Positions 3,832-60,173 of a stretch of 64,000 bases of DNA are shown piece by piece; position 1 is the stretch's first letter; each line of letters starts with the position of its first letter. Both the position numbers and the translations under genes were made by a program. The stretch is from positions 248,001-312,000 of IMG/VR virus record IMGVR_UViG_3300042923_000569. One strand, 5' to 3'. The notes beneath the pieces were generated by a model, which was given only the letters and a program-made list of their open reading frames with translations, was not told the DNA's origin and made no database searches.

Positions 3832-4152
3832 TTATTTTGTGTCTAACAGATGTACTTTATCTTTGTAGTAGTGATAGGTAGTCTTTGCATACAGACTTAC
3901 CATCCATAACCAGAACAGACATGACAGCCAGATTTGTAAATGTGTTACTACATTCCCGTATAGAAGCCCAATTAACCACAAACAAATTACGGTATATAGT
4001 GGGATTACATTAAAGAATGCAGATTTACTTTTCAGTAGTACCATCGTCGAACCCCACACAGATTTCCGTTGCTGGAATTTAGTGACGTACAAATCAAATA
4101 CGAAAAGTAAATTAACTAACGTAGTTCCGATAACGAATCCAAAAATGTTCAT
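3832..4152 (-). CDS. hypothetical membrane protein
   Basis: Three hydrophobic segments. Confidence 0.7.
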   Translation of the reverse strand: MNIFGFVIGTTLVNLLFVFDLYVTKFQQRKSVWGSTMVLLKSKSAFFNVIPLYTVICLWLIGLLYGNVVTHLQIWLSCLFWLWMVSLYAKTTYHYYKDKVHLLDTK

Positions 4153-13343: not shown

Positions 13344-14348
13344 TTATTCGAAGTTAATATTATTACGTACTACAATGCGACGTACTTTATCCATCATATC
13401 ATTGTAGCGACGGGATAGAGTTGCTTTTGAAGTTACAAACTTTCCTTTACCATCAATATAACCAGAAGTAATTACTTCGTCAAAGGTATGAACACGATAC
13501 CCGTCAAGGCCATGTACTAAACCTAATAGAACTCGTTCATGTTCTTCAAGTTCATCCATAATTTCTTCCATCACTGCAAGAAAATCTTTACTCAAACAAC
13601 GTTCATCTACAACGTAGTCTGCACTTTCACCTGGTATAATATCTTTTAGAGTTTGTTCTGAACCTTCTTCTGAACGGTTCATTGGCGTATCAATACTAAA
13701 AGTATTACTGTTATAATTCATAATACGTTTTACTGCACGGATATCGATCCCGGTTGCTTCTGAAATTTGTTCGTTTGTTGGATAGCCATTGCTATCAGAA
13801 ATGAAACGTTCAATGAATGATTGAATTTTAATATTACTTACAGAAAGATGTTCTGGTAGTGCAACCATCCGTACATCATTGTTGCCGTTACGATACATGT
13901 ACTGACGGATTGCAGTAGTAGCATAAGTACTAAACATTGTACGGAAAGATGGATCAAAACCATAGATTGCTTTCATCAATCCTTCGAATCCATATTGTAC
14001 TTTATCTTGGAATGGAATGTTACAAGTACAGTTCTTTGCTTCAGTATAAACTAAACCACTATTATAAAGTACTAGTAGTTTTTTAGATTCTTCTACATCT
14101 TCACCTGATTGGATCTTACGAATAAGTTCTTCATTGCTCACATATTCACGCGACTTTACAGAAGCTTTAATTTTATCCATAGTTAAATCAGAAGAGGAAG
14201 TATTATCTTCTTGTTTTGTTTCTTCTTCTAAATCAAGCGAACCTAGATTATCCAGATTTGTTGTTTCTTCTTCAAAGCATTCGTTTAGTACTTCTTCCTG
14301 AATTTCTTCTAAGTTTAGCTTTTTAATGCTCACATTTTCTCCGAACAA
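13344..14348 (-). CDS. RNA polymerase sigma-70 family factor
   Basis: Region 2 signature LVLYNSGLV...QDKVQYGFEGLMKAIYGFDPSFRTMFSTYA...RMVALP; region 3 PTNEQISEATG...SIDTP; TTG start uncertain. Confidence 0.9.
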   Translation of the reverse strand: MFGENVSIKKLNLEEIQEEVLNECFEEETTNLDNLGSLDLEEETKQEDNTSSSDLTMDKIKASVKSREYVSNEELIRKIQSGEDVEESKKLLVLYNSGLVYTEAKNCTCNIPFQDKVQYGFEGLMKAIYGFDPSFRTMFSTYATTAIRQYMYRNGNNDVRMVALPEHLSVSNIKIQSFIERFISDSNGYPTNEQISEATGIDIRAVKRIMNYNSNTFSIDTPMNRSEEGSEQTLKDIIPGESADYVVDERCLSKDFLAVMEEIMDELEEHERVLLGLVHGLDGYRVHTFDEVITSGYIDGKGKFVTSKATLSRRYNDMMDKVRRIVVRNNINFE

Positions 14349-26199: not shown

Positions 26200-27447
26200 T
26201 CACGACACGGCTTCTGTGTCAAGCCTAGAAATGAATTCTTCGGCATTATCTTTACATTCCAAGAAAAGTGCTTGTAAATCACAACCAGCTTTCGTTGAGA
26301 ATGTAATATCAGGTATATTTGCATCAGGGTACATTAGTTTAATATATTCCTTGATTTCAATATCTTCTAGATATGGTATTTCATATATATAATCAACCCT
26401 TCCTTTACGCACTACTGCTGGATCAACTTTTTCAAGATGGTTAGTAGTTAAGAAGATGATAGTACCGTTCAACGAAATCACACCATCTAGTACATTAAGA
26501 ATTTTTGATAGGCTTAACATTTCCATATCAAAGATATTATCGGATTGTGCTTTTGTTTCACGGTCATGAACTGCACTACATGAATCAAAGTCTTCAATCA
26601 GTACTATACTATTAGGTGGAATAGTACTCATTGCTTTTTCAAATGATTTATTACTCATAGTTGATAAATCAATGATACAAATATTTTTATTAAAGTTAGA
26701 TGCAATTGCTTTAATAGTACTACTCTTACCAGTGCCAGGTTTTCCATGTAAAATATAAGTTTGTTTACATGCTAGACCACGAGATGTGTACCAATCAGGA
26801 TTACTATAGAAGTACTCTAGGTTTTCTAGAATTTTATCTTTAATTTCTTTTTTGAGAATTACAGAAGATAATGGACGCTTCTTAACACTTGTCAAGTACT
26901 TCCAGTCTTCACCAGCAATTGTATAAATTCCCATATCGTCTTTCTTTGGTTTATATGCGAAGTCCTGTATTAATGCCATAATAGGCTTTTGGCTTCGACC
27001 AAAGGTTTTAATTACAATATGTTGCTTTTCTTTTTCTGAACCCTGTGAGTTTAAAGATGTTTTTTCAAACCAGAATAATCTTTTATTATAGAAGAAGAAG
27101 TGTTTACCATACCCTGCACCTACCACGTATGACTCATTATTATCGTTATCACTGTACCAACCGGTATTACCATCAAGAGATAAGTATCTAGACCATTTAG
27201 CATATGGTGATTTTAAAAACCAAGACATAAAAGCTTTAAACTGAGTCTCGTTTCCGGTATGTCCTGCGTTATTAAACTCTAAACTTGTCAGTACCTGTCT
27301 TTTTACAAACATAATAAATGTTGGAATAAACTTTAGACAGTACGTTAATACACCTAATCCCCATAATGAAACTGCCCCTGCTAACCAGGGATAGGTTTTC
27401 ATTGCCAGTACTAACTGTGCGTATAATCCCGCAACAAACTCGAACAT
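26200..27447 (-). CDS. BCS1-like AAA+ ATPase with N-terminal TM segment
   Basis: RPLSSVIL...WYTSRGL...Walker A GKPGTGKS, Walker B VLIEDFD, LNVLDG, TTNH..KVDPAVVRKGRVD. Confidence 0.9.
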   Translation of the reverse strand: MFEFVAGLYAQLVLAMKTYPWLAGAVSLWGLGVLTYCLKFIPTFIMFVKRQVLTSLEFNNAGHTGNETQFKAFMSWFLKSPYAKWSRYLSLDGNTGWYSDNDNNESYVVGAGYGKHFFFYNKRLFWFEKTSLNSQGSEKEKQHIVIKTFGRSQKPIMALIQDFAYKPKKDDMGIYTIAGEDWKYLTSVKKRPLSSVILKKEIKDKILENLEYFYSNPDWYTSRGLACKQTYILHGKPGTGKSSTIKAIASNFNKNICIIDLSTMSNKSFEKAMSTIPPNSIVLIEDFDSCSAVHDRETKAQSDNIFDMEMLSLSKILNVLDGVISLNGTIIFLTTNHLEKVDPAVVRKGRVDYIYEIPYLEDIEIKEYIKLMYPDANIPDITFSTKAGCDLQALFLECKDNAEEFISRLDTEAVS

Positions 27448-39478: not shown

Positions 39479-39725
39479 CCTGCATATCTTGCAAGCGTTT
39501 CATGATTTCATCAATGAAAATCATAGCTTGTTCTTCTGATAGATTATCAGGAATTTCTAAAATCAGTTCACCTGACTCTTTCCCACTTTCAATCATATCA
39601 CGTAAACAATTATTAATCTGTTCTGCGAAATCTTCTGCGGATAGTTCAATTTTTGGTACTTCATTCATGTATGCAAAATGCATAAAATTAGTAGTCATAT
39701 AACTCTCAATAATGCTGGAATCCAT
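39462..39725 (-). CDS. hypothetical acidic protein
   Basis: ORF; start probably MTTNF. Confidence 0.65.
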   Translation of the reverse strand: MDSSIIESYMTTNFMHFAYMNEVPKIELSAEDFAEQINNCLRDMIESGKESGELILEIPDNLSEEQAMIFIDEIMKRLQDMQDDSDE

Positions 39726-39777
39726 TTTGAAGTTTTCAATTAACAGTTGAGTTCATTATGGTTGCTGATAGATTCCA
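39716..39777 (-). ncRNA. GAAUC/CAGCAA-module RNA A (minimal, Asn GUU anticodon-loop mimic)
   Basis: TGGAATC-TA-TCAGCAACCA...TCAA-CTGTTAA-TTGA...GATTCCA. Confidence 0.7.
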
Positions 39778-40793: not shown

Positions 40794-40847
40794 TAGAATC
40801 TATTGTTTTTCATATATCCAATGATGTTTGATTGCTGTTAGATTCTA
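40794..40847 (-). ncRNA. GAAUC/CAGCAA-module RNA B (minimal)
   Basis: TAGAATC-TA-ACAGCAATCA...TCAT-TGGATAT-ATGA...GATTCTA; near-identical to 41113-41166. Confidence 0.7.
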
Positions 40848-41112: not shown

Positions 41113-41166
41113 TAGAATCCATCTTTTTTCATATATCCAATGATGTTTGATTGCTGTTAGATTCTA
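41113..41166 (-). ncRNA. GAAUC/CAGCAA-module RNA C (minimal)
   Basis: Direct repeat of RNA B. Confidence 0.7.
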
Positions 41167-42170: not shown

Positions 42171-42761
42171 TTATTGACCAAACTTGGTCATAGCTTCTTC
42201 TAGTGTATATGAATTTACAACTTTAATAGATGCAACATTGTATATTATTACGAATACTTCACCATTATTAAACTTGTACGTATAAGCATCATACCCAAGT
42301 TGTGTTAATGCACGAACAAATTGCGTCGGATGACTGTTATACCAATCATACCATACTGACATAAGTGCATCATACATACTATCTTCACTCATATAATTAT
42401 CGAGTGCAGTACGAATAGCACGATTTTTGTCTTCGTCCCAATTTGTATATGCTTCATCATCAGGAGTATTCTGTATTAATTTTAGCAGTACTGCCTTGTT
42501 AATTTTCTGACTTTTTGATAGTTCTTTTCTTATTGTCAATTCACATTCATAAATCATACCCGTAGGGGATTTTTCACAATACCCACGTGCAGTAATTGGA
42601 TTAGATGTGAAATATATACCTGGCCCGTATTCATCGTTACCTCTACCAACGAATTCATCGCTGAATTGTGAAATTGGATTTTGTGTACCATGATAATAGT
42701 AACCGGATAGTTTACCTTCCATGATAGAAGATATATCTTCCATCAATTTTTTCATTTGCAT
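42171..42761 (-). CDS. putative ADP-ribosyltransferase-fold protein
   Basis: YYHGT...YGPGIYFTSN...ARGY...LGYDAY...E.FVIIYN (H-Y-E type ART pattern). Confidence 0.65.
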   Translation of the reverse strand: MQMKKLMEDISSIMEGKLSGYYYHGTQNPISQFSDEFVGRGNDEYGPGIYFTSNPITARGYCEKSPTGMIYECELTIRKELSKSQKINKAVLLKLIQNTPDDEAYTNWDEDKNRAIRTALDNYMSEDSMYDALMSVWYDWYNSHPTQFVRALTQLGYDAYTYKFNNGEVFVIIYNVASIKVVNSYTLEEAMTKFGQ

Positions 42762-43459: not shown

Positions 43460-43580
43460 TGGAATTCATTTAATTTTTGACCGCTGCGTCTACCGATTTC
43501 GCCACTTGCACCGAAGTGCAAGGCAGGACTCGAACCTGCAAAAAGCTGTTTGCTATTAGTGTGTTTGCTGCTGAATTCCA
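43460..43580 (-). ncRNA. GAAUC/CAGCAA-module RNA D (circularly permuted tRNA mimic)
   Basis: TGGAATTC-A-GCAGCAAACA...T-arm GCAGG-TTCGAGT-CCTGC, acceptor CTTGCAC-TTCG-GTGCAAG, D-arm TGGCGAAATCGGTAGACGC...GAATTCCA. Confidence 0.85.
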
Positions 43581-44649: not shown

Positions 44650-44672
44650 AATCGTTATCTCTTAATTAAAAC

Positions 44673-44731
44673 TGGAATCCACATAGTCAAAGTAAAAGTT
44701 TGAGTTTTTGTGTGGTTGCTGGGGGATTCCA
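44673..44731 (-). ncRNA. GAAUC/CAGCAA-module RNA E (minimal, Lys UUU anticodon-loop mimic)
   Basis: TGGAATC-CC-CCAGCAACCA...TCAAA-CTTTTAC-TTTGA...GATTCCA. Confidence 0.72.
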
Positions 44732-44738
44732 AAACTTG

Positions 44739-45423: not shown

Positions 45424-45527
45424 AAGAATCGGGTTTTTCTGTGCCTCGTAACCAACGATGAAAGGGAATTGAACCCTAAGCGGTTTTCGCCAAATGAAAT
45501 AAGATTTATGGTTGCTGTGCGATTCTT
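45424..45527 (-). ncRNA. GAAUC/CAGCAA-module RNA G (permuted, Gln UUG-like loop)
   Basis: AAGAATC-GC-ACAGCAACCA...TTTC-ATTTGGC-GAAA, T-arm AGGG-TTCAATT-CCCT, D-like TCGT-TGGTT-ACGA...GATTCTT. Confidence 0.75.
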
Positions 45528-45643
45528 TAAATTGGAGTATATATTGGTGTTCTACAGGACTAGTGATTCTCAATAAGAGACGAATGATAAGCGTCGTGTC
45601 ATATCATCCTACAATAGAGCATCAGATCTGAGCAATACATACT

Positions 45644-45725: not shown

Positions 45726-45731
45726 AAATTG

Positions 45732-45803
45732 CGTTCCCACGGAGACTTGAACTCCGGTTCCATGCGTGAAAGGCATGTGTCCTAACCACTAGACGATGGG
45801 AAC
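45732..45803 (-). tRNA. tRNA-Glu(UUC)
   Basis: CATGC-CTTTCAC-GCATG; G73. Confidence 0.93.
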
Positions 45804-45974: not shown

Positions 45975-46092
45975 GAAATCTTTTCTATACGGTCATCCAG
46001 ACACAGCCTAAAAAGCAACATGGCTGCTGGGGGATCGAACCCCACCGTTTTTCATAGCAGGAAAAAAGTTTTTATGTTTGCTGTAAGATTTC
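45975..46092 (-). ncRNA. GAAUC/CAGCAA-module RNA H (permuted tRNA mimic, Ser GCU loop)
   Basis: GAAATC-TT-ACAGCAAACA...TTTTTC-CTGCTAT-GAAAAA, T-arm TGGGG-TTCGATC-CCCA, acceptor hairpin GCAGCC/GGCTGT, D-arm GTC-TGGAT-GAC...GATTTC. Confidence 0.8.
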
Positions 46093-46105
46093 GATATTGC
46101 TTCGT

Positions 46106-46212
46106 GCAGCGACAAGGATTTGAACCTACGTGATATTAAGAGAAACCTTCTCTACTTAATTCATTACCAGTGATCGATTTACTAATGAATCGCGTCAATC
46201 ACCATCCCGCTA
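46106..46212 (-). ncRNA. tRNA-like RNA with enlarged anticodon and variable arms
   Basis: Acceptor TAGCGG/TCGCTG, T-loop AGG-TTCAAAT-CCT, arms TTCATTA/TAATGAA and AGAGAA/TTCTCT. Confidence 0.5.
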
Positions 46213-48700: not shown

Positions 48701-50062
48701 TTACCACTCTACACCGACACCAGCACCCCAAAGTACTTCGGACTGTGTGTTGGTACTGACCGTCACTTTCGTGGTTACAGCTTGGTTTACACGAGAACTG
48801 AAGCCTACTGCCACAGCCTGTTCACCATCATAACCACCTACGCCTGCACCCAGCATGAAATTACCATCGCGGGTTACCTGGGGAATGTTCGCCATAGCAC
48901 CGGCACCGGCAATACCTGCACTTGCAAGTTTACGGTTATCGCCCATACGTTTATCAATATCAGAGAAACGTTTGTTATTTTTGTAATCGCTGTTGTTCAT
49001 GCGATCTTCAACTTTACCAATACGCTGAGTGTTACTGGTGATACGTTCGTCATGATCAACCAGAGTACTGTCATTGTTATCGATACGTTTACTTAACACA
49101 GCATCAGCACTTTTACGCGACGATGTTTCAGCAGTTACTGAGCGTTGTACAGAAGATACCGCAGCGGTACGTTCAGTACTTTCATCGTTGATCTGTTGTG
49201 CCAATGCTTTATCTGCGTTACCACGAGTAGTGGATTCAGACTGTAATGCATTATCCTGACGTTGTTGATCTTTCAGGAAGGTATTATTATCTACCTTAGT
49301 ACTGATAACAACGTTTTGCTGGTCATCCGTAATACGCTGTTCAGCTTTGTTTTTGTCGATATTGCTTTGCAGCATTTTATCGCCAGAAACACGCTCGGAT
49401 TTTTCAACAATAAGTGCATTACTATTGTCCTGTCCCAGCCGAACACCAATATCAGCAGTGTTTTGTGCATTGATCGCATTGTTGTTGGCATTCTGACCAA
49501 TTTCAATTGCAGTCTGTGCATTATTACCTGCGTTGATTGCATTGTTATTTGCATTATGTGCCAGGTCTTTTGCTTCTTCAACACCGGCTTGTGCAGTGAT
49601 TGCCTTGTTATCGGCTGCCTGACCAATTTCAATTGCAGTTTGTGCATTGGTCATTGCATTGTTAGCGGTGTTTTGTGCATCGCTGGCTTTATTAAAAGCG
49701 TTATGACCGATGTTTTTTGCTTCTTCAACACCTGTCTGACGTTCACTGATTTCTTTCTGAAGTGCATTGTCCTGACGTTGTTGATCAACCTGGAAAACGC
49801 TCTTATCAAGTTTATCTTTTTGGAGGTTTGAAACTTGATATTCTAAATTCTTCCCGGCGGCTTCATTGTACTTAGTTTGAATTTCTTTCCACTGAGTTTG
49901 TTCTTCTTTCCATGCACGATCTTTCTCAGCGAGAAGGTTCGCATCTTGTACTTTATCGTAAGCAGTGGGAGTTTTTACACAACCACAACTTGGATCAATT
50001 GAAGTAGCATGTGCAGAAACTGAACATGCAACAATCGCCATTGCAATCAATGTCTTTTTCAT
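48701..50062 (-). CDS. YadA-family trimeric autotransporter adhesin
   Basis: Signal peptide MKKTLIAMAIVACSVSAHA (start reassigned), coiled-coil stalk with repeats, anchor GIAGAGAMANIPQ...GAGVGGYDGEQAVAVG...GAGVGVEW. Confidence 0.9.
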   Translation of the reverse strand: MKKTLIAMAIVACSVSAHATSIDPSCGCVKTPTAYDKVQDANLLAEKDRAWKEEQTQWKEIQTKYNEAAGKNLEYQVSNLQKDKLDKSVFQVDQQRQDNALQKEISERQTGVEEAKNIGHNAFNKASDAQNTANNAMTNAQTAIEIGQAADNKAITAQAGVEEAKDLAHNANNNAINAGNNAQTAIEIGQNANNNAINAQNTADIGVRLGQDNSNALIVEKSERVSGDKMLQSNIDKNKAEQRITDDQQNVVISTKVDNNTFLKDQQRQDNALQSESTTRGNADKALAQQINDESTERTAAVSSVQRSVTAETSSRKSADAVLSKRIDNNDSTLVDHDERITSNTQRIGKVEDRMNNSDYKNNKRFSDIDKRMGDNRKLASAGIAGAGAMANIPQVTRDGNFMLGAGVGGYDGEQAVAVGFSSRVNQAVTTKVTVSTNTQSEVLWGAGVGVEW

Positions 50063-50189
50063 TTTTATTACCCTGGTGTGCCGCCACATTTGGCGTGAGG
50101 TAATAATACCGTGTCGAAACATTTCGGTCAACACATTTTTTAATATAATTCAAAGAAAACTTAACCCAAATTTACATTAAAAAAGATAT

Positions 50190-51389: not shown

Positions 51390-51513
51390 TGGCGGCGAGT
51401 ACTGGATTCGAACCAGTGACCAGGACATTAAAAGTGTATGAGTTATGGTTGCTGCGGGAATCCAATCAGGATTCCTTGGGTTCTACCTGCTCTACCAACT
51501 GAGCTAACTCGCC
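51390..51513 (-). ncRNA. tRNA-Lys(UUU) interrupted by a 48-nt GAAUC/CAGCAA module (RNA I)
   Basis: Removing 51438-51485 gives a 76-nt cloverleaf with GGACA-CTTTTAA-TGTCC and CCA. Confidence 0.88.
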
Positions 51514-51520
51514 TATATTT

Positions 51521-51877
51521 TTAACGAATAAGTACTAAAGTATTATTTTTAGCCAGCTCATTCACATCATAATTATCAAGTAGTTGATCAAGTGATTCAA
51601 CTAAGATAATTGGATTTTCGGTACTTTCGCTTACATCAACCAAGCTTTCTTTAATTTCCAAGAAATCTTGTACATATGGTTCACTGATAACACTATTATA
51701 CTCAGATGCATAATAAGTTACAGTTTTGTTGACACGCAAATTAAGTAATGTTCCTACAAAATCATGAATATCATTTGGTTTACCAATTAAAGTAAACTTC
51801 ATACCAAGATCTTTTTTAGAACAAATATCAGATGCAATATCTTGATATGCATGTTCTGCCATTTTAATATTTAACAT
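51521..51877 (-). CDS. hypothetical protein
   Basis: ORF with AAGGA SD. Confidence 0.7.
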   Translation of the reverse strand: MLNIKMAEHAYQDIASDICSKKDLGMKFTLIGKPNDIHDFVGTLLNLRVNKTVTYYASEYNSVISEPYVQDFLEIKESLVDVSESTENPIILVESLDQLLDNYDVNELAKNNTLVLIR

Positions 51878-51885
51878 TGTTATCC

Positions 51886-52245: not shown

Positions 52246-52607
52246 TCGTGATTCTCCAGGCTATTAGCAATCAGTTCGATTCCAACTGCTTTTAGTAATT
52301 CAAAACAATTATCGAACATCATGTTAACCAAATCAGCATCAGATGAATGAAGATAAATCTGCTTGAGCTTAGGCCAAGTACTACCATCTCCCCACATCCA
52401 ATCACCAGCAACCATATAAAACAGATCCTGACCAGTAAGTTCAGGTTCATCCATATAGTTATCGAAATGGATCACTTCGATTTCAGCGGCATTTGCAATC
52501 AGGAAACTTCTTGATTCCCACCATTCTTTCAGCCAAACAATACCTTCTGACTGTTCAGGGGTAAGATGATTAACCGGATTGCGAATATCATCAATAAAGA
52601 CTTTCAT
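52242..52607 (-). CDS. cyclic-phosphate-processing receiver-like domain protein (tandem paralog)
   Basis: MKVFIDDIRNP...EVIHFDNYM...TG...IYLHSS. Confidence 0.7.
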   Translation of the reverse strand: MKVFIDDIRNPVNHLTPEQSEGIVWLKEWWESRSFLIANAAEIEVIHFDNYMDEPELTGQDLFYMVAGDWMWGDGSTWPKLKQIYLHSSDADLVNMMFDNCFELLKAVGIELIANSLENHE

Positions 52608-52846
52608 TGACTTTCCTTAATAACTTTTTGAAATGCTCGTATCTGCCTAATAATAACACAAACCGAATCATATTCATCAATTGCTCCGGTATTAACCAGT
52701 ACTTCAATTGAATCAAGAAGTTTTTCATCTTCTTCATTGATGTTGATTGATTTACTTAGTTTATTAAGTATCAATAACGAACGATGAACAAAATGTAAAT
52801 TATTCGAGCCAGGTTCACTGAAGATAGTTAGAAGATTATTGTCCAT
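52604..52846 (-). CDS. hypothetical protein
   Basis: ORF. Confidence 0.65.
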   Translation of the reverse strand: MDNNLLTIFSEPGSNNLHFVHRSLLILNKLSKSININEEDEKLLDSIEVLVNTGAIDEYDSVCVIIRQIRAFQKVIKESQ

Positions 52847-53171
52847 TTACCACCAGATGATGACCATGACTACGAGCAATAAACTGATCGACACTACAAC
52901 CCATTTCTTTACCAATAGTGGCAGTAGTGAAATCTGCTGAACCTACTTCACGGAACGTTTGTGTATCGAATGTATTATCAACATTCAATTCATAAACACA
53001 GTTCTCTTTTAATTCGATGCTGCCATTAGCTGGATGGTCTTTTGGTACAATATGACCAATTACAATACCACCTGGCATTACATGGAGCCGCATGACCATT
53101 GAGTTCATAAAATTAAATCCAGTGCATTTATTCAAGATATGAATGTTATCAAATACGTCAATCAAAGTCAA
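52836..53171 (-). CDS. hypothetical protein
   Basis: ORF, TTG start. Confidence 0.65.
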   Translation of the reverse strand: MTLIDVFDNIHILNKCTGFNFMNSMVMRLHVMPGGIVIGHIVPKDHPANGSIELKENCVYELNVDNTFDTQTFREVGSADFTTATIGKEMGCSVDQFIARSHGHHLVVNGQ

Positions 53172-53178
53172 GTACTTT

Positions 53179-53472
53179 TTATGAAAAATTTTCGTGATGC
53201 TTATAATTTAACGATGAATAGCACGATAGATCATACGCAATAAAATCATAAAATTTTGGTACATGTTCTTGTAGTTTACGCATCACTTTGAAATCAGCAC
53301 GTGCTTCTTCAGGTGTGTAAACTTTTAGACCGCAATGAAAGTACTCGTCATGTTCGGACTTCCACTTTTCAATTGCCATTTCATCAGTCATCAGATGATC
53401 ATCAGTGTAGATAATCTCGGTTGTCCATCCTTCGCCAGTAGCAGCGTACTCATAGAATAAGAAACTTTTCAC
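53179..53472 (-). CDS. hypothetical protein
   Basis: YAATGEG motif. Confidence 0.7.
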   Translation of the reverse strand: MKSFLFYEYAATGEGWTTEIIYTDDHLMTDEMAIEKWKSEHDEYFHCGLKVYTPEEARADFKVMRKLQEHVPKFYDFIAYDLSCYSSLNYKHHENFS

Positions 53473-53678
53473 TTATTAACCTCACTTATGTTTCTGATAA
53501 TATTTTCACATCGCCCAAGTTTCTTTTTCAGCTTATTATGTTCCTTCAACAAATCATTGTATGTCTGAAGTTTAACAAATTCACCTTTTTTAGATTCCTG
53601 CATTTCTGCGTCATAAGAATATTCATCATCCCATAAATCAAAACTACGTTTTACTACTGGATTATATTTCTTTACCAT
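53469..53678 (-). CDS. hypothetical protein
   Basis: MQES..GEFVK..Y phage motif. Confidence 0.7.
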   Translation of the reverse strand: MVKKYNPVVKRSFDLWDDEYSYDAEMQESKKGEFVKLQTYNDLLKEHNKLKKKLGRCENIIRNISEVNK

Positions 53679-53692
53679 GATATTACCATTTG

Positions 53693-53803
53693 TGCAAGGT
53701 GCAGGATTCGAACCTGCGTTACGTTCTTGAAATGAAAGTTATGTATGCCGTAAGATTCCATCTGGAATCGCTTTTCGTGTCCTAACCACTAGACGAACCT
53801 TGC
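53693..53803 (-). ncRNA. tRNA-Glu(UUC) interrupted by a 39-nt GAAUC/CGGCAU module (RNA J)
   Basis: Removing 53737-53775 gives a cloverleaf with CGTTC-ATTTCAA-GAACG and a Glu-type D-arm TCGTCTAGTGGTTAGGAC. Confidence 0.85.
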
Positions 53804-53809
53804 TATATT

Positions 53810-54112
53810 TTAGATTACTGGTGCATTAGAACCAATAAACATTTTAAAATTGCAGTCATGCATATAACCATTGAAATCTTTAATTGCAGTTTCAATGATT
53901 GTTAAGTATTCAGTACTACCGGGTTGAACATCAACTTCAAAGTAGTATTCCGATATATCAGTTGGATCAATCTGTAAAAGACGGGCTTTTCCACCTGCAT
54001 AGATATTATATAACAGACGTTCATGAACGTCAGACCACGCTTCAGTATCTTGTTCATTTTTAGGTGCAATGGTCAATACGTTGGAACGTGCAACAATAAC
54101 TAAGTTAATCAT
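53810..54112 (-). CDS. hypothetical protein
   Basis: ORF. Confidence 0.7.
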   Translation of the reverse strand: MINLVIVARSNVLTIAPKNEQDTEAWSDVHERLLYNIYAGGKARLLQIDPTDISEYYFEVDVQPGSTEYLTIIETAIKDFNGYMHDCNFKMFIGSNAPVI

Positions 54113-54394
54113 TTAATCTCCGATGGCAATTTCTTTAGGAGTGAATTCAAAATAGCCGTGAGAATTCAATACTTCAATTACTTTGTCACGCACTTCTTCA
54201 TCACGCTTATTATGATATTTTACATAATACTTATCTTCTTCACTAGCATGATCAACTTTAGCGTATTCATATTCACGCATTTTTTCAATTACAATGTTAC
54301 GCATTTCATCGACTTCAGGAGAAGTATTATTACCGATGAATAATGATGTATATGAACAACAATCATATTCTTTTAGATTTAAAATTTTCATCAA
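54113..54394 (-). CDS. hypothetical protein (paralog of 54391-54657)
   Basis: LF.G...SP...L..HGY.E..P..I.IGD. Confidence 0.75.
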   Translation of the reverse strand: MMKILNLKEYDCCSYTSLFIGNNTSPEVDEMRNIVIEKMREYEYAKVDHASEEDKYYVKYHNKRDEEVRDKVIEVLNSHGYFEFTPKEIAIGD

Positions 54395-54657
54395 TCACCA
54401 ATAGTAATAGAACGAGGTTTATATTCTGAGTAACCATGACCTTTAAGAATCGAATAGAACAATTCCTTCAATTCTTGTTGTTCACGATAACTACGGCAGT
54501 TAGTCTGAAAACCTTCGTCATCAACGATAGGTTCTTCCATGTATGTTTTTAATTCTGCCAGTACTACACTTGGCTGTGGGGAAAGTTCCCCACCTTTGAA
54601 CAGTGTCTGTACCAAGCAATCAAAATCACCATAGGTGTTAATTGCTAGTAGTTTCAT
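54391..54657 (-). CDS. hypothetical protein (paralog of 54113-54394)
   Basis: Same motifs. Confidence 0.75.
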   Translation of the reverse strand: MKLLAINTYGDFDCLVQTLFKGGELSPQPSVVLAELKTYMEEPIVDDEGFQTNCRSYREQQELKELFYSILKGHGYSEYKPRSITIGD

Positions 54658-54839
54658 TAGTAGTCACCCAAGTTTGATACACAAAAATCAGTATTGATTT
54701 CGTGTTCTTGAACATCAGTGATTTCACGGTCAACGGCAACTGGATGCGTAGAAAGCATACGATTGTAGGCATTTTCAACGGATACATCCACTAGCGTTAT
54801 TGAACCGTAATATCCCAAATCTAACGTGTACAGTTTCAT
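54657..54839 (-). CDS. hypothetical protein
   Basis: ORF coupled to neighbours. Confidence 0.65.
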   Translation of the reverse strand: MKLYTLDLGYYGSITLVDVSVENAYNRMLSTHPVAVDREITDVQEHEINTDFCVSNLGDY

Positions 54840-55249
54840 AAGTAATCCTTAGTCATATCATATACAACTGAATTAAGTTCAGAGAATTTTACTTTCCACG
54901 GCTGATAGTACTGTTGGAGTAGCTGATCTTTCTTGAACAAAGCTTCTAGTGCATTTACTGCGTATTTGAGATCTTCAACGAACTTATCCTTAACTTTCTG
55001 GATATATTCTGGTTTCATACCAGAGAAGCCCATTTTGTACGCAACTTCGAATTCACGATAGGACGCACCCAAATCACCTAATGGGTTCTTAACGTTCTCA
55101 GGAAAACAGAAGCGATATACTTCTTCACATGTTTCCTTTAGACGTTCTTCAGCTTTAGCTTCTTTCCCGTACTTTTCGAAAAAGATTTCTGCTGGAGGAT
55201 AGGTTTTGGCATTCGCATACCATTGAACCAGTAATTCATTCATTGCCAT
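54836..55249 (-). CDS. hypothetical protein
   Basis: ORF. Confidence 0.7.
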   Translation of the reverse strand: MAMNELLVQWYANAKTYPPAEIFFEKYGKEAKAEERLKETCEEVYRFCFPENVKNPLGDLGASYREFEVAYKMGFSGMKPEYIQKVKDKFVEDLKYAVNALEALFKKDQLLQQYYQPWKVKFSELNSVVYDMTKDYL

Positions 55250-56051
55250 AATCCTTATCAGACACGCCAGGGATGCTAGTATAATCTTCTACACTGGTAT
55301 TATGCATTTCCAGTACTATTACACCAGCACCTTGATCTTTCACAAATCCAGTACTACTGTAAATGGCGTCCATCATTTCGGTCCACTTATCATAGTTCAC
55401 TGTGTACTCAGTTCCGACAAACTCCCAGCGTCCGAAGCTTCCAGAAATGAATCCAATGAATTCACCTTTCCAGAAGACGTTAATAGTTCGAGTTCCGAAT
55501 TTGTTATCGTAGCTATCAACATCATTCCATACAACTTTGAGATCTAAATCTACTGGCTGATTCTCATTATAACCAAACCAGCTTTTAAAGTCCATGATTA
55601 GATCGTAGTTGCGATCATATTGTTCTTCCTGCAATCCAAAGAATTTACAAAAAGAATCTGTTAATACAGAGAAATCAGATTTCATGATTTCGGGTGCATC
55701 AATTAGCTGACGCCAGTTCGGAACTTCAAGATGAATACGTGCGAAGCGTGAAGCATCAATGACCAGTGTTTCAGTTAATCCAGAAACATCCAATGTGTCA
55801 CATTTGACGTAATCACGACAAGATTCAATAAGTTTAAAGGCTTTGTGCATGTCATCTTCGCACATTTGGTAAACAGTACTTTCATTGGAGAACCCGACCA
55901 TAAGTTCAACTTCATCGTTTACTAAAAACGGATAAACCAAAAAGTACTTATATTCTTCAATATTTTTATTGAAGCTTTTAATATGATTCCGACGACCATT
56001 TTTGATAAGATCGGTATAACCATCTACCAGCGTTTGTACTAAATCAGACAT
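55236..56051 (-). CDS. hypothetical protein
   Basis: 271 aa ORF downstream of promoter at 56087. Confidence 0.8.
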   Translation of the reverse strand: MSDLVQTLVDGYTDLIKNGRRNHIKSFNKNIEEYKYFLVYPFLVNDEVELMVGFSNESTVYQMCEDDMHKAFKLIESCRDYVKCDTLDVSGLTETLVIDASRFARIHLEVPNWRQLIDAPEIMKSDFSVLTDSFCKFFGLQEEQYDRNYDLIMDFKSWFGYNENQPVDLDLKVVWNDVDSYDNKFGTRTINVFWKGEFIGFISGSFGRWEFVGTEYTVNYDKWTEMMDAIYSSTGFVKDQGAGVIVLEMHNTSVEDYTSIPGVSDKDYGNE

Positions 56052-56082
56052 TGGACAACCTTTGGTTTCTCAATTAATAGAA

Positions 56083-56115
56083 CAGTACTGTACCAGAAAG
56101 ATTCAGTACTGTCAA
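56083..56115 (-). promoter_or_regulatory. sigma70-type promoter overlapped by two CAGTACTG palindromes
   Basis: TTGACA-GTACTGAATCTTTCTGG-TACAGT-ACTG. Confidence 0.7.
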
Positions 56116-56119
56116 CAAC

Positions 56120-56578
56120 TTATACTATTTTATCGATAGCATCCAGATCAAACGCCTGCTCTGAACCAGGCACGTGCGTTGAAGAAGTAAAGATAAAGTT
56201 TCCTGCTGGTGTTTCTTCGAACCGTTGACCCGGATGTGCGGTGAGATAACGATTTTCCTCACCATCAGGCCATTCAATACCAACGGTTTTAACAGTTCCG
56301 CTTTCGTAGTTAATTTCGAATGCAGTTACATCTACGCCTTTTAAACGTGTTTTCCAATCGTATGAAGATGCAAAAGTTTCATCAGCAACAAGTTGTGCTG
56401 TTGGAAGAAATGCAATTCCAAACAATTCGCGGTTGTCATCTTCGAATACTTCGTGACCATTTTCAAACATAAAGTCACGATTGTTTATAAAACTAAACCA
56501 GAATACATGTTTGATATCGAATGTTAGTACTTCGCAGTTTTCTGTTACTAAGGTAATGCTTTTGATCTTATCTGTCAT
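56120..56578 (-). CDS. hypothetical protein
   Basis: IKSITLVTENCE phage motif. Confidence 0.75.
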   Translation of the reverse strand: MTDKIKSITLVTENCEVLTFDIKHVFWFSFINNRDFMFENGHEVFEDDNRELFGIAFLPTAQLVADETFASSYDWKTRLKGVDVTAFEINYESGTVKTVGIEWPDGEENRYLTAHPGQRFEETPAGNFIFTSSTHVPGSEQAFDLDAIDKIV

Positions 56579-56724
56579 ATTGTTCCTTATTTGATAAAGT
56601 AGTATACTACGCTTAAGCCGATAACTACTGCTACAGTAGTAACAAGCTTCTTCAAATCATTCTTTCCAATACTTTCTGGATTTACTGCTTTATCGGTTTC
56701 TGGATCAATTTTAATAGACATGGT

Positions 56725-56988
56725 TTACCAATCGTTAAGGATATAAATTGTTCTACACTCTGGATTATCTGCAAAAAGCTTTTCAAAGATTTTAGTCAAA
56801 CCTTCAGATTCAAAGCTCATATAATCACGACTGACAGTAGTGAAGCCGGAACCATCTTGACCATAAAGACAATCAACTTGACACATATCACATACGTCAT
56901 TCCATTCATAGCCAAGTATTTCACCAACGGTATTAATATCACCAGTTGTAATGATATAATGCTGTTCAATAATAAATGGTTCTGACAT
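56725..56988 (-). CDS. hypothetical protein
   Basis: ORF. Confidence 0.7.
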   Translation of the reverse strand: MSEPFIIEQHYIITTGDINTVGEILGYEWNDVCDMCQVDCLYGQDGSGFTTVSRDYMSFESEGLTKIFEKLFADNPECRTIYILNDW

Positions 56989-57218
56989 TATTTTACCTTT
57001 GGAGCAGTACGTGCTGCATCATAGAATTTGTTTACTTTATTACGATAAGAAATTGCAGCATCAAATGCAGTACTGTCAATCCCTTCTTTCATGATGCGAA
57101 TAACACCGTCTTCATATTCATAAAATTCTTTATTGATATAAGCAAGCACCGTAGTGCGGTGACCTTTAAGACGCTGAAGGCTCATTTTCTGTAGTACTTT
57201 ATCTTCTAACTGTTTCAT
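56988..57218 (-). CDS. hypothetical protein
   Basis: ORF. Confidence 0.7.
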   Translation of the reverse strand: MKQLEDKVLQKMSLQRLKGHRTTVLAYINKEFYEYEDGVIRIMKEGIDSTAFDAAISYRNKVNKFYDAARTAPKVK

Positions 57219-59611: not shown

Positions 59612-59721
59612 TGCATAAAGTAGGGTTCGAACCTACAAGGGAACCTCGCGGCTGCTCCCGAAGTCCTATCTTCGCTTTCGCTATTGTCGGACTCTCCGTT
59701 TACCAATTCCGGCATTTATGC
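59612..59721 (-). ncRNA. tRNA-Leu-like RNA with 22-nt anticodon loop
   Basis: Acceptor GCATAAA/TTTATGC-A, Leu-type D-arm, GAGTCC-[22 nt]-GGACTT, long variable arm, canonical T-arm. Confidence 0.8.
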
Positions 59722-60098: not shown

Positions 60099-60173
60099 TG
60101 GTGCCCCTGACAGGATTCGAACCCGCGAATCACGGTTTTAGGGACCGCTGTTCTACCATAGAACGGCAGGGGC
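60099..60173 (-). tRNA. amber suppressor-like tRNA (CUA)
   Basis: GCGGT-CCCTAAA-ACCGT; full cloverleaf and CCA; C8 and C33 are non-canonical. Confidence 0.75.

What the first reader, a model, noticed from the sequence alone, without database searches (positions are those of the whole stretch)
53693..53803. tRNA-Glu(UUC) carrying the same module at the identical 28/29 position
Seen: ...GGAC-A-CG|AAAAGC-GATTCCA-GA-TGGAATC-TT-ACGGCATACATAACT|TTC-ATTTCAA-GAACG... Removing 39 nt gives a CGTTC/GAACG stem and a Glu-type cloverleaf. A different tRNA body with the same insertion site as 51390 argues for a designed architecture rather than a random insertion. The discriminator is A and position 32 is A, unlike the normal Glu gene at 45732, which fits a non-translating role (inference).
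Basis: partly seen in the sequence, partly recalled or inferred. Interest (0 to 1): 0.85.

Follow-up and report, generated by a model that had tools for sequence, protein, structure and literature searches.

The report
tRNA-shaped Y RNA for phage Ro protein
This jumbo-phage "interrupted tRNA-Glu" is a real, conserved RNA, and its 39-base insert appears to be a docking site for a phage Ro60-like protein rather than a random insertion or an ordinary intron, which would explain the "pseudo-tRNAs" annotated in many large phages.

Summary
Window 53803..53693 (- strand) is a Glu-type tRNA frame with a 39-nt insert between anticodon-stem positions 28 and 29. A Lys-type sibling (51513..51393) carries a 48-nt insert at the same place.

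The insert has four parts: an A-rich linker, a hairpin, an invariant C-N-G-C-A, and an AU-rich tail. It is conserved in Rak2-like jumbo phages, KVP40-like vibriophages and dozens of uncultured viral contigs, in many tRNA types, and all helices covary.

The same helix+CAGCAA module also occurs free-standing and in YrlA-like permuted tRNA mimics, including five more copies in this window. In 31 of 31 viral loci that hold both, it lies on the same strand as a DUF2828-vWA gene, at a median of about 340 nt. That protein's model matches phage Ro60.

The window's own genome encodes this protein between an RNA ligase and a 2H phosphoesterase.

Best reading: a Y-RNA-like partner of a Ro-like protein, built on an intact tRNA frame. 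Binding, expression and function are inferred. Splicing is not excluded, because no RNA data were available.

The parts
53693..53803 (-). The whole 111-nt Glu-frame tRNA-shaped RNA (the finding).
   Evidence: Rfam tRNA 43.1 bits; model R1 102.4 bits; orthologues in 13 or more cultured phages.
53776..53803 (-). tRNA nt 1-28: acceptor 5' strand, U8, D arm (GTCT/GGAC), A26, and C27-G28 of the anticodon stem.
   Evidence: Read from the sequence. U8, A14, G18, G19 and A21 are invariant in 54 family members.
53737..53775 (-). The 39-nt inserted module: linker AAAAGC, hairpin, UUA, CGGCA, tail UACAUAACU.
   Evidence: Among 6 orthologues the linker and motif are 100% identical and the hairpin stem 91%.
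53754..53769 (-). Module hairpin GATTCC-AGAT-GGAATC.
   Evidence: Predicted in the minimum-free-energy fold. All 6 pairs show changes on both sides across 54 sequences, with G-U pairs only possible on this strand.
53746..53750 (-). Invariant motif C-N-G-C-A (here CGGCA).
   Evidence: Invariant in the 22 BLAST-derived sequences and in 54/54 (A in 53/54) of alignment A3.
53724..53736 (-). Distal anticodon stem (TTC/GAA) and the 7-nt loop ATTTCAA (anticodon UUC at 53729-53731).
   Evidence: Pairs 29-31/39-41 covary. U33 in 46/48 and a purine at position 37 in 48/52.
53693..53723 (-). C42-G43, variable loop TAAC, T arm, acceptor 3' strand, discriminator A.
   Evidence: The 3' trailer CAAAT resembles that of the window's ordinary tRNAs.
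51393..51513 (-). Sibling: a Lys(UUU)-frame tRNA-shaped RNA with a 48-nt module (51438-51485) at the same 28/29 site, and CCA encoded.
   Evidence: Rfam tRNA 47 bits; R1 117.3 bits; orthologues found.
43460..43580 (-). YrlA-like permuted tRNA mimic: helix TGGAATTC/GAATTCCA, then CAGCAA, T arm, acceptor hairpin and D arm.
   Evidence: Weak Rfam YrlA hit of 25.7 bits.
39717..39776 (-). Free-standing module: helix GGAATCTAT/ATGGATTCC enclosing CAGCAA.
40794..40847 (-). Free-standing module: helix TAGAATCTA/TAGATTCTA plus CAGCAA, 3 nt upstream of tRNA-Gln.
41113..41166 (-). Free-standing module, a near-duplicate of the one at 40794-40847.
44672..44732 (-). Free-standing module: helix TTGGAATCC/GGATTCCAG plus CAGCAA.

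Best explanation
The element is a stable, tRNA-shaped noncoding RNA of the Y-RNA kind. It is a complete Glu-type tRNA frame: acceptor, D and T arms with all tertiary-contact nucleotides, and a split but intact anticodon stem with a canonical 7-nt loop.

A protein-binding module is grafted into that frame between positions 28 and 29. The module consists of a hairpin whose 3' strand runs, after 2-4 nt, into single-stranded C-N-G-C-A(A/U), with an A-rich strand entering the hairpin from the 5' side.

I propose that this module is the docking site of the phage's Ro60-like ring protein (DUF2828 + DUF7788/vWA). In this genome that protein is encoded between an RNA ligase and a 2H phosphoesterase. 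The tRNA part would then be the 'effector' half of the RNP. It would present a tRNA body and anticodon loop to tRNA-binding enzymes such as the neighbouring repair enzymes, host anticodon nucleases, processing enzymes or PNPase.

Shown here:
- the anatomy, conservation and covariation of the RNA;
- the recurrence of the same module in three topologies (free-standing, permuted YrlA-like, and inside tRNA frames);
- its strong same-strand linkage and phyletic co-occurrence with the DUF2828 gene;
- the Ro60-like fold of that protein;
- the presence of the protein gene in the window's own genome.

Inferred: physical binding, retention of the insert in the mature RNA, and the biological role (tRNA repair, quality control or counter-defence).
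For: 1. Family. The same 28/29 module occurs in Glu, Lys, Asn, Thr, Asp, Pro, Gly, Phe and other frames. Carriers include Rak2-like phages, Schizotequatroviruses and many IMG/VR contigs.

2. Structure. On 54 distinct sequences, 97.7% of cells are paired and 26 of 27 pairs show changes on both sides, against about 40% paired when partners are slid. The tRNA invariants are about 100% conserved.

3. The insert is more conserved than the tRNA stems among orthologues. Linker and motif are 100% identical and the hairpin stem 91%, against 61% for the acceptor stem and 67% for the T stem.

4. The anticodon is not conserved among orthologues. The Glu frames carry UUC, UCA or an 8-nt loop. One Lys frame carries GAU. 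Ordinary Glu(UUC) and Lys(UUU) tRNAs are also present in the window.

5. The module occurs without a tRNA frame. The window holds four free-standing copies and one YrlA-like copy.

6. In FelixO1, a mycobacteriophage, a Bacillus phage and a Listeria phage, 3-4 ACAGCAA heptamers lie on the gene strand and none on the other, mostly within about 1.1 kb of the DUF2828 gene (about 0.5 expected per strand).

7. Gene linkage. Of 119 loci fetched by the RNA pattern alone, 31 hold a DUF2828 gene. In 31 of 31 it is on the same strand, at a median of about 340 nt.

8. Co-occurrence. Every cultured phage found to carry the interrupted tRNAs encodes the protein.

9. The window's source contig is 100% identical over 4.9 kb. 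It encodes RNA ligase, the DUF2828-DUF7788 protein and a 2H-SAK phosphoesterase in a row.

10. Fold. An AF2 model (pLDDT 74.7) has Thermus phage Ro60 (9KOP, 9L5Y) as its best PDB matches, over the full length, with E 6e-6 and TM 0.50-0.56.

11. Literature.
- Bacterial and phage Y RNAs lie on the same strand within 4 kb of Ro60 genes and mimic tRNA (PMC4201824).
- In Listeria phage CKA15 the Rsr-like protein lies within 2 kb of the three most highly transcribed non-coding regions, on the same strand (PMC12282133).
Against: No RNA data were available. Neither expression nor the mature length is known.

No binding data exist.

In this phage the Ro-like gene is not next to the element. It is not in the 64-kb window, and in Yen9-04 the two lie about 190 kb apart.

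The canonical Ro-binding motif of YrlA (GNCGAA) is absent, and the Rfam YrlA model does not hit this element.

The anticodon loop keeps tRNA rules (U33, purine 37, isotype-appropriate loops in most copies), and several Lys copies encode CCA. That is what one would expect of a tRNA that ends up decoding, for example after removal of the insert.

The invariance of CAGCA in the IMG/VR set is partly by construction, because that pattern was used to fetch those loci. The pattern-independent BLAST set (22 sequences) shows C-N-G-C-A invariance on its own.
Confidence: 0.68

Rival explanations
1. It is a true mini-intron. The 39 nt are cut out by a protein endonuclease, and the nick in the anticodon stem is healed and sealed by phage 2H phosphoesterase, kinase and RNA ligase. 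The product is a working tRNA-Glu(UUC). The Ro-like protein, if involved, would be a splicing or maturation cofactor.
For: Removing the insert gives a canonical tRNA that ARAGORN accepts.

Both halves of the split stem covary, U33 and purine 37 are kept, and loops fit the isotype in most copies.

The same element at the same site in many tRNA types is how introns with a common machinery behave.

The genome encodes an RNA ligase and a 2H phosphoesterase beside the Ro-like gene. CBB also has RnlA (PMC5259590).
Against: The same module occurs free-standing and in permuted tRNA mimics, where nothing can be spliced.

The insert is more conserved than the exons.

Some family members have no anticodon loop left once the module is removed, or carry the module at 26/27 or 31/32.

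Anticodons drift among orthologues.

No bulge-helix-bulge can be drawn, and there is no group I core.

No endonuclease candidate was found.

No spliced joint appeared in the runs laid, but those are DNA or uninformative.
Confidence: 0.18
2. The tRNA is only a scaffold. The module is an aptamer or small RNA for some partner other than the Ro-like protein, and the tRNA frame merely gives stability and RNase P / 3' processing.
For: Free-standing copies abut tRNA genes, so tRNA processing would define their ends.

Binding to the Ro-like protein is untested.
Against: The 31 of 31 same-strand linkage to DUF2828 genes and the full phyletic co-occurrence point to that protein.

A mere scaffold would not need canonical, isotype-matched anticodon loops.
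Confidence: 0.08
3. It is a dead tRNA gene disrupted by a selfish DNA insertion, or the palindrome works at the DNA level or as a terminator for antisense transcription.
For: Annotators call these genes 'pseudo', 'OTHER' or 'Undet' tRNAs (PMC3468402).

On the + strand the hairpin followed by GCTTTT scores as terminator-like.
Against: Compensatory changes maintain every helix across distant phages.

G-U pairs in the hairpin fit only the tRNA strand.

The linker is not U-rich on the opposite strand in most members.

The module is under stronger constraint than the stems.
Confidence: 0.04

Closest known systems
YrlA-class bacterial and phage Y RNAs (Rfam RF02553; Chen et al. 2014, PMC4201824)
   Same: A noncoding RNA made of a Ro-protein-binding helix/motif plus a tRNA-like domain, with D and T arms and the tertiary-contact nucleotides. 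In most family members it is encoded on the same strand near a Ro-type gene. A permuted YrlA-like sibling sits in this window at 43460-43580.
   Different: Here the RNA ends lie at a normal acceptor stem (not permuted) and a full anticodon stem-loop is kept. The protein-binding module is an internal hairpin inserted at 28/29. The motif is CNGCA(A) rather than GNCGAA. The partner protein is the DUF2828/DUF7788 type, not Pfam TROVE. The Rfam YrlA model does not detect it.
Thermus phage phiLo Ro60 with Yrl1/Yrl2 RNAs (PMC12135203; PDB 9KOP, 9L5Y)
   Same: A phage-encoded Ro60 ring protein with phage-encoded Y-like RNAs. It is the best structural match of the DUF2828-vWA protein model.
   Different: Only about 15% sequence identity. 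The phiLo Yrl RNAs are stem-bulge-stem RNAs with a CGAA motif and are not tRNA frames.
Protein-spliced tRNA introns of archaea and eukaryotes, including non-canonical positions (PMC4090602)
   Same: A short intervening sequence at a fixed position in different tRNA types, and exons that alone form a canonical tRNA.
   Different: There is no bulge-helix-bulge. The host is a bacterial virus. The insert is more conserved than the exons. The same element also exists outside tRNAs.
'Pseudo-tRNAs' annotated in KVP40/phi-pp2 and Rak2-like phages, and the 'enigmatic introns' of Lak megaphage tRNAs
   Same: The KVP40-group low-score 'GCA/TGC' pseudo-tRNAs (PMC3468402) and the CBB, BF and Yen9-04 'tRNA-OTHER/Pseudo/Undet' features are members of this very family.
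   Different: Those reports give no structure or function. Whether the Lak introns (PMC6784885) carry this module was not tested.

Membership tests
Y RNA / YrlA-class tRNA-mimic Y RNA | The same genome encodes a Ro60-type ring protein (HEAT-repeat TROVE-like domain plus vWA). | tested here: met
   The source contig (100% identical to the window over 4887 nt) encodes a DUF2828+DUF7788 protein. A family model matches phage Ro60 9KOP/9L5Y at E 6e-6.
Y RNA / YrlA-class tRNA-mimic Y RNA | The RNA gene lies within about 4 kb of the Ro gene on the same strand. | tested here: not met
   There is no DUF2828 gene in the 64-kb window. In Yen9-04 the two lie about 190 kb apart. The feature is met by 31 of 31 other family members in IMG/VR loci.
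Y RNA / YrlA-class tRNA-mimic Y RNA | Ro-binding motif GNCGAAN0-1G (CGAA) in the terminal helix. | tested here: not met
   The motif here is C-N-G-C-A(A/U) next to an internal hairpin.
Y RNA / YrlA-class tRNA-mimic Y RNA | A tRNA-like domain with D and T arms and the tertiary-interaction nucleotides. | tested here: met
   U8, A14, G18, G19, A21, T54, T55, C56, A58 and C61 are about 100% conserved. Rfam tRNA scores 43.1 bits.
Y RNA / YrlA-class tRNA-mimic Y RNA | Rfam RF02553 score at or above the gathering score (69 bits). | tested here: not met
   No YrlA hit on 53693-53803. The sibling at 43483-43546 scores 25.7 bits.
Y RNA / YrlA-class tRNA-mimic Y RNA | Physical association with the Ro protein. 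| not testable with these tools
   This needs RIP, EMSA or cryo-EM.
Canonical elongator tRNA-Glu | A cloverleaf with a contiguous 5-bp anticodon stem. | tested here: not met
   A 39-nt insert sits between positions 28 and 29. ARAGORN fails on the gene as it stands.
Canonical elongator tRNA-Glu | A 7-nt anticodon loop with U33, UUC and a purine at 37. | tested here: met
   The loop is ATTTCAA.
Canonical elongator tRNA-Glu | The anticodon is conserved among orthologues. | tested here: not met
   The window, CBB, BF and GAP32 carry UUC. Yen9-04 carries UCA. Kaldavass and XbC2 carry the 8-nt loop ATTCATAA.
Canonical elongator tRNA-Glu | Aminoacylation and use on the ribosome. | not testable with these tools
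   No experimental data.
tRNA intron (group I, bacterial type) | A self-splicing core (P3-P9, more than 200 nt) in the anticodon loop. | tested here: not met
   The insert is 39 nt and lies in the stem. No intron family appears in cmscan at E up to 10.
tRNA intron (protein-spliced, archaeal/eukaryal type) | A bulge-helix-bulge spanning both junctions. | tested here: not met
   Neither inspection nor the minimum-free-energy fold gives a 3-4-3 motif. The 3' exon start is separated from the 42-43 strand by the anticodon hairpin.
tRNA intron (any type) | A spliced junction in RNA. | tested here: inconclusive
   No RNA run holds the phage. The contigs laid keep the insert but are DNA or of unknown kind.
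DUF2828-linked helix-CNGCA RNA module (family delineated here) | A helix strand, then 0-5 nt, then CNGCA(A/U), with an A-rich strand entering the partner strand, and a DUF2828 gene in the genome. | tested here: met

The most novel reading that the evidence does not exclude
The tRNA-framed Y RNAs are anticodon-specific baits or adaptors of a phage RNA-repair RNP. Bound to the Ro-like ring, they would present a Glu, Lys, Asn, Thr or other anticodon arm to host anticodon nucleases, or hand cleaved tRNAs to the neighbouring 2H phosphoesterase and RNA ligase.

In CBB and Listeria phage CKA15 the Ro-like protein is found in virions, so the RNP may be injected with the DNA.

On this reading, the anticodon switching among orthologues would record an arms race with host tRNases.

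A variant of the same reading: the module is removed on demand by these enzymes. That would be the first protein-catalysed tRNA splicing pathway of a bacterial virus.
Probability: 0.25. Interest if true: 0.9.

Novelty: new variant of a known kind. Interest (0 to 1): 0.74.

Why it matters
It would turn a scattered annotation nuisance into one RNA family with a candidate protein partner. That nuisance is the 110-125-nt 'pseudo', 'OTHER' or 'Undet' tRNAs of KVP40-like, Rak2-like and many uncultured large phages. The candidate partner occurs in about 700 sequenced phage records, including FelixO1, KVP40 and P100-like Listeria phages.

It extends the Y RNA concept in three ways:
- to a different Ro-like protein family (DUF2828/DUF7788);
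- to a new recognition motif (CNGCA);
- to a new architecture, in which a complete, anticodon-bearing tRNA is the effector half.

It ties Ro-like RNPs to a ligase and 2H-phosphoesterase repair cluster. This makes the long-open question of what bacterial and phage Ro/Y RNPs do with their tRNA-like domains directly testable in tractable phages.

Tried and rejected
Ideas tested and rejected:
- Group I intron or known small ribozymes. cmscan at E up to 10 found nothing in the insert.
- Bulge-helix-bulge intron. None can be drawn.
- tmRNA-like tag starting at the GCA. The reading frame is broken by 1-nt indels in BF, XbC2 and Kaldavass (sequences), and ARAGORN finds no tmRNA.
- An alternative cloverleaf using GCA as a Cys anticodon, as tRNAscan and annotators did. 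There is no flanking stem, and N33 is not U.
- Antisense terminator or DNA palindrome. G-U pairs fit only the tRNA strand.
- CRISPR-repeat mimic or boxB-like hairpin. Rejected from memory only, because the hairpin sequence covaries freely.
- A splicing or RNA enzyme in the window. Pfam on 20 of the larger ORFs gave only a YadA anchor, a BCS1-type AAA ATPase, a sigma-70-like factor and ART-PolyVal.

Searches that led nowhere:
- RNA evidence. Two run searches found no RNA run holding the phage.
- The one read-laying run showed relatives' contigs that keep the insert, plus host tRNA cross-matches. One example is a 'joint' 53722>53779 with 17 foreign letters at depth 736, which is a host tRNA and not a spliced form.
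- Literature. Ten searches found no description of this module or of the DUF2828 RNA partner.
- The KVP40 genome paper could not be fetched.
- phmmer of the Ro-like protein against PDB sequences found nothing. Only the fold search did.

Full report
**1. Observation**

On the - strand, window 53803..53693 reads as a Glu-type tRNA frame. It has:
- an acceptor stem GCAAGGT/ACCTTGC;
- a D arm identical to that of the window's normal tRNA-Glu;
- a T arm GCAGG-TTCGAAT-CCTGC;
- the variable loop TAAC.

Its anticodon stem is split after C27-G28 by 39 nt. The insert reads AAAAGC GATTCC-AGAT-GGAATC TTA CGGCA TACATAACT, and the frame then resumes with TTC ATTTCAA GAACG.

ARAGORN does not call the gene. 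Rfam tRNA scores it 43.1 bits, with the middle treated as an insertion. With the 39 nt removed, ARAGORN calls tRNA-Glu(ttc).

The element at 51513..51393 is a Lys(UUU) frame with a 48-nt insert at the same 28/29 site.

The normal Glu gene at 45731-45803 has G73 and C32.

**2. Conservation**

The window is a new Rak2-like jumbo phage. It is about 79-81% identical to GAP32, CBB and Eneladusvirus over only 6-8% of a 24-kb query.

BLAST finds Glu-frame and Lys-frame orthologues with the insert in these Rak2-like phages:
- fHe-Yen9-03/04;
- BF;
- six pEa_SNUABM phages;
- CBB;
- GAP32;
- XbC2;
- Kaldavass.

It also finds more distant copies in KVP40-like vibriophages, which carry three to five such genes in tandem. 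Annotators list these genes as tRNA-OTHER, Pseudo, Undet or mis-typed tRNAs. The phi-pp2/KVP40 paper calls them low-score pseudo-forms with GCA/TGC anticodons (PMC3468402).

A MAFFT alignment of 22 sequences shows an invariant C-N-G-C-A after the hairpin.

A scan of IMG/VR with CAGCAA-N25-45-GGTTCGAATCC returned 119 or more loci. Dozens of them hold the same architecture in Thr, Asp, Asn, Pro, Gly, Phe, Cys, Val and suppressor-like frames, often on contigs of 100-420 kb.

The split point is 28/29 in most members. A minority have the module at 26/27 or 31/32, and a few have no recognisable anticodon loop.

**3. Structure**

A covariance model (R1) scores the two window copies 102 and 117 bits, against 53 or less for ordinary tRNAs. 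It aligned 55 members.

On that alignment:
- 97.7% of cells are paired, against about 40% when the partners are slid.
- 26 of 27 pairs show changes on both sides. These include the two halves of the split anticodon stem and all six pairs of the module hairpin. The alignment was fitted to the model, so this leans somewhat towards the structure.
- The tRNA tertiary invariants are essentially 100% conserved.
- U33 is present in 46/48 and a purine at position 37 in 48/52.

**4. Evidence against an ordinary intron**

- Among six Glu orthologues the insert is more conserved than the 'exons'. Linker and motif are 100% identical and the hairpin stem 91%, against 61% for the acceptor and 67% for the T stem.
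- Anticodons drift among close orthologues. Glu frames carry UUC, UCA or an 8-nt loop, and one Lys frame carries GAU.
- The window already has ordinary Glu(UUC) and Lys(UUU) tRNAs.
- No group I core, known ribozyme or bulge-helix-bulge is present.

**5. The decisive lead**

Clustering the ORFs of 24 IMG/VR loci that hold interrupted tRNAs showed one protein of about 500 aa immediately beside them in 8-9 loci. It carries DUF2828 + DUF7788 + a vWA signal.

Gene linkage across all 119 loci fetched by the RNA pattern alone:
- 31 hold this gene.
- In 31 of 31 the RNA pattern is on the gene's strand.
- The median distance is about 340 nt, and 25 of the 31 lie within 800 nt.
- This is the criterion Chen et al. 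used for Y RNAs (PMC4201824).

tblastn finds the protein in about 700 phage records. These include every cultured phage found to carry interrupted tRNAs, both Rak2-like and Schizotequatrovirus.

An AlphaFold model (pLDDT 74.7) has as its only significant PDB matches the Ro60 of Thermus phage phiLo (9KOP, 9L5Y). The match covers the full length, with E 6e-6 and TM 0.50-0.56. Mycobacteriophage homologues are annotated 'Ro-like RNA binding protein'. HHpred on the Listeria phage CKA15_055 protein, by position the counterpart of LMTA-148 gp065, pointed to Rsr (PMC12282133).

**6. The module outside tRNA frames**

Beside the DUF2828 gene of FelixO1, Mycobacterium phage Kingsolomon, Bacillus phage Thrax3 and Listeria phage LMTA-148:
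- 3-4 ACAGCAA heptamers lie on the gene strand and none on the other strand (about 0.5 expected per strand).
- In the intergenic stretches inspected, each sits just 3' of a helix strand whose partner lies downstream.
- In Kingsolomon and FelixO1 one such helix encloses a permuted tRNA-like domain. The Kingsolomon copy scores 37.9 bits with Rfam YrlA.

The window itself contains four free-standing copies, at 39717-39776, 40794-40847, 41113-41166 and 44672-44732. It also contains a YrlA-like permuted copy at 43460-43580.

The three topologies are circular permutations of one another. In each case a helix strand (GGAATC here) runs into NN-C-N-G-C-A, and an A-rich strand enters the partner strand.
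- In the tRNA-framed form the helix is closed by a tetraloop and the RNA ends sit at the acceptor stem.
- In the YrlA-like form the helix carries the ends and the acceptor stem is closed by a loop.

**7. The window's own genome**

A 29-nt probe from the module finds IMGVR_UViG_3300042923_000569 (357,873 bp). Its stored stretch is 100% identical to window 52278-57164.

The same contig encodes, in a row:
- an RNA ligase (PHA02142 OB fold + PF09414);
- the DUF2828-DUF7788 protein;
- a 2H-SAK phosphoesterase.

The order is the same in Yen9-04. CBB has the ligase CBB_181 two genes upstream of CBB_183, its DUF2828 protein. CBB_183 is annotated 'structural protein'. The CKA15 protein was found in purified virions, with 20 peptides and 57% coverage.

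**8. Interpretation**

The best-supported reading is a Y-RNA-type RNP. The module docks the Ro-like ring, and the tRNA frame is the effector half.

The repair-gene neighbourhood matches two published observations:
- the Salmonella rsr-yrlBA-rtcBA precedent (PMC7790460, seen);
- the remark that jumbo phages carry ROT/TROVE proteins with tRNA-like partners as repair platforms (PMC7824862).

Together these point to tRNA repair, quality control or counter-defence against tRNA-cutting host systems.

These last steps are inference. So is retention of the insert, because no RNA run holds the phage and the one read-laying run was uninformative on splicing.

The canonical anticodon loops and the encoded CCA of several Lys copies keep the splicing alternative alive, at about 0.2.

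**9. Novelty**

Y RNAs that mimic tRNA and phage Ro60 proteins are already known.

Ten literature searches and Rfam 15 gave no description of the following:
- the DUF2828-type partner;
- the CNGCA module;
- the unpermuted, anticodon-bearing tRNA-framed form.

I file it as a new variant of a known kind.

Noticed in passing
window 59612-59721 (-): A 110-nt tRNA-like element right after tRNA-Leu, missed by ARAGORN and Rfam. It has an acceptor GCATAAA/TTTATGC, a T arm GTAGG-TTCGAAC-CCTAC, an 'anticodon' stem GAGTCC/GGACTT with a 22-nt loop, and a long variable-arm-like segment. It has no CNGCA module.
   Followed up: no
window 45459-45569 and 46025-46182 (-): Weak R1 hits (19.6 and 18.8 bits), each with GAATC/AAATC..CAGCAA followed by a T-arm-like hairpin. 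These may be degenerate or divergent Y-like elements.
   Followed up: partly
window 60102-60173 (-): An ordinary-length tRNA found by Rfam (50.6 bits) but not by ARAGORN.
   Followed up: no
window 51514-51885: The 118-aa ORF just upstream of the Lys-frame RNA is absent from the related contigs of runs X1 and X3 (a 372-nt skip). In pEa_SNUABM_50 an HNH endonuclease gene sits at that place (L014). This looks like an indel hot spot beside the element.
   Followed up: no
window 42171-42761 (-), 26200-27447 (-), 48701-50134 (-), 13344-14348 (-): Proteins in and around the tRNA cluster: an ART-PolyVal ADP-ribosyltransferase, a BCS1-type AAA ATPase, a protein with a YadA-like membrane anchor, and a sigma-70-like factor.
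   Followed up: no
L007, L008, L009, L015 (Vibrio phages D479, CZ01, VS1, PG216): In the vibriophage copies, leader and trailer pair to extend the acceptor stem to about 20 bp (for example AACATATTGAGCAGGGT...ACCCTGCTCAATATGTT). This is not seen in the Rak2-like copies. It may be a processing signal.
   Followed up: no
L146 ~3960-4000 (Vibrio phage PG216): The 5' UTR of the Ro-like gene itself carries UUUUACAGCAAUUUAAU about 20 nt before the ATG. This is a possible autoregulatory binding site.
   Followed up: no
L143 1460-2011 (Listeria phage LMTA-148): A ROOL RNA match (90 bits, E 4e-17, just under the gathering score of 99.1) lies between tRNA genes and the Ro-like gene. RtcB ligase genes lie 1.3 kb downstream.
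   Followed up: no
L001 2389-2466 (Erwinia phage Kaldavass); L001, L005, L008, L009: An ordinary-length Kaldavass tRNA has an 8-nt anticodon loop (ARAGORN anticodon 'ttag'). The 8-nt loop ATTCATAA recurs in the tRNA-framed RNAs of Kaldavass, XbC2, CZ01 and VS1.
   Followed up: no
L145 (CBB_183); PMC12282133: The Ro-like protein is annotated as a virion 'structural protein' in CBB, SNUABM_12 and Salmonella phage 7t3. It was detected by mass spectrometry in purified Listeria phage CKA15 particles.
   Followed up: partly
L019 2228-2683, L015 3938-4393 (vibriophages): A T4 57B-like 2H 'RNA ligase/cyclic nucleotide phosphodiesterase' gene lies about 0.7 kb from the tandem interrupted tRNAs.
   Followed up: no
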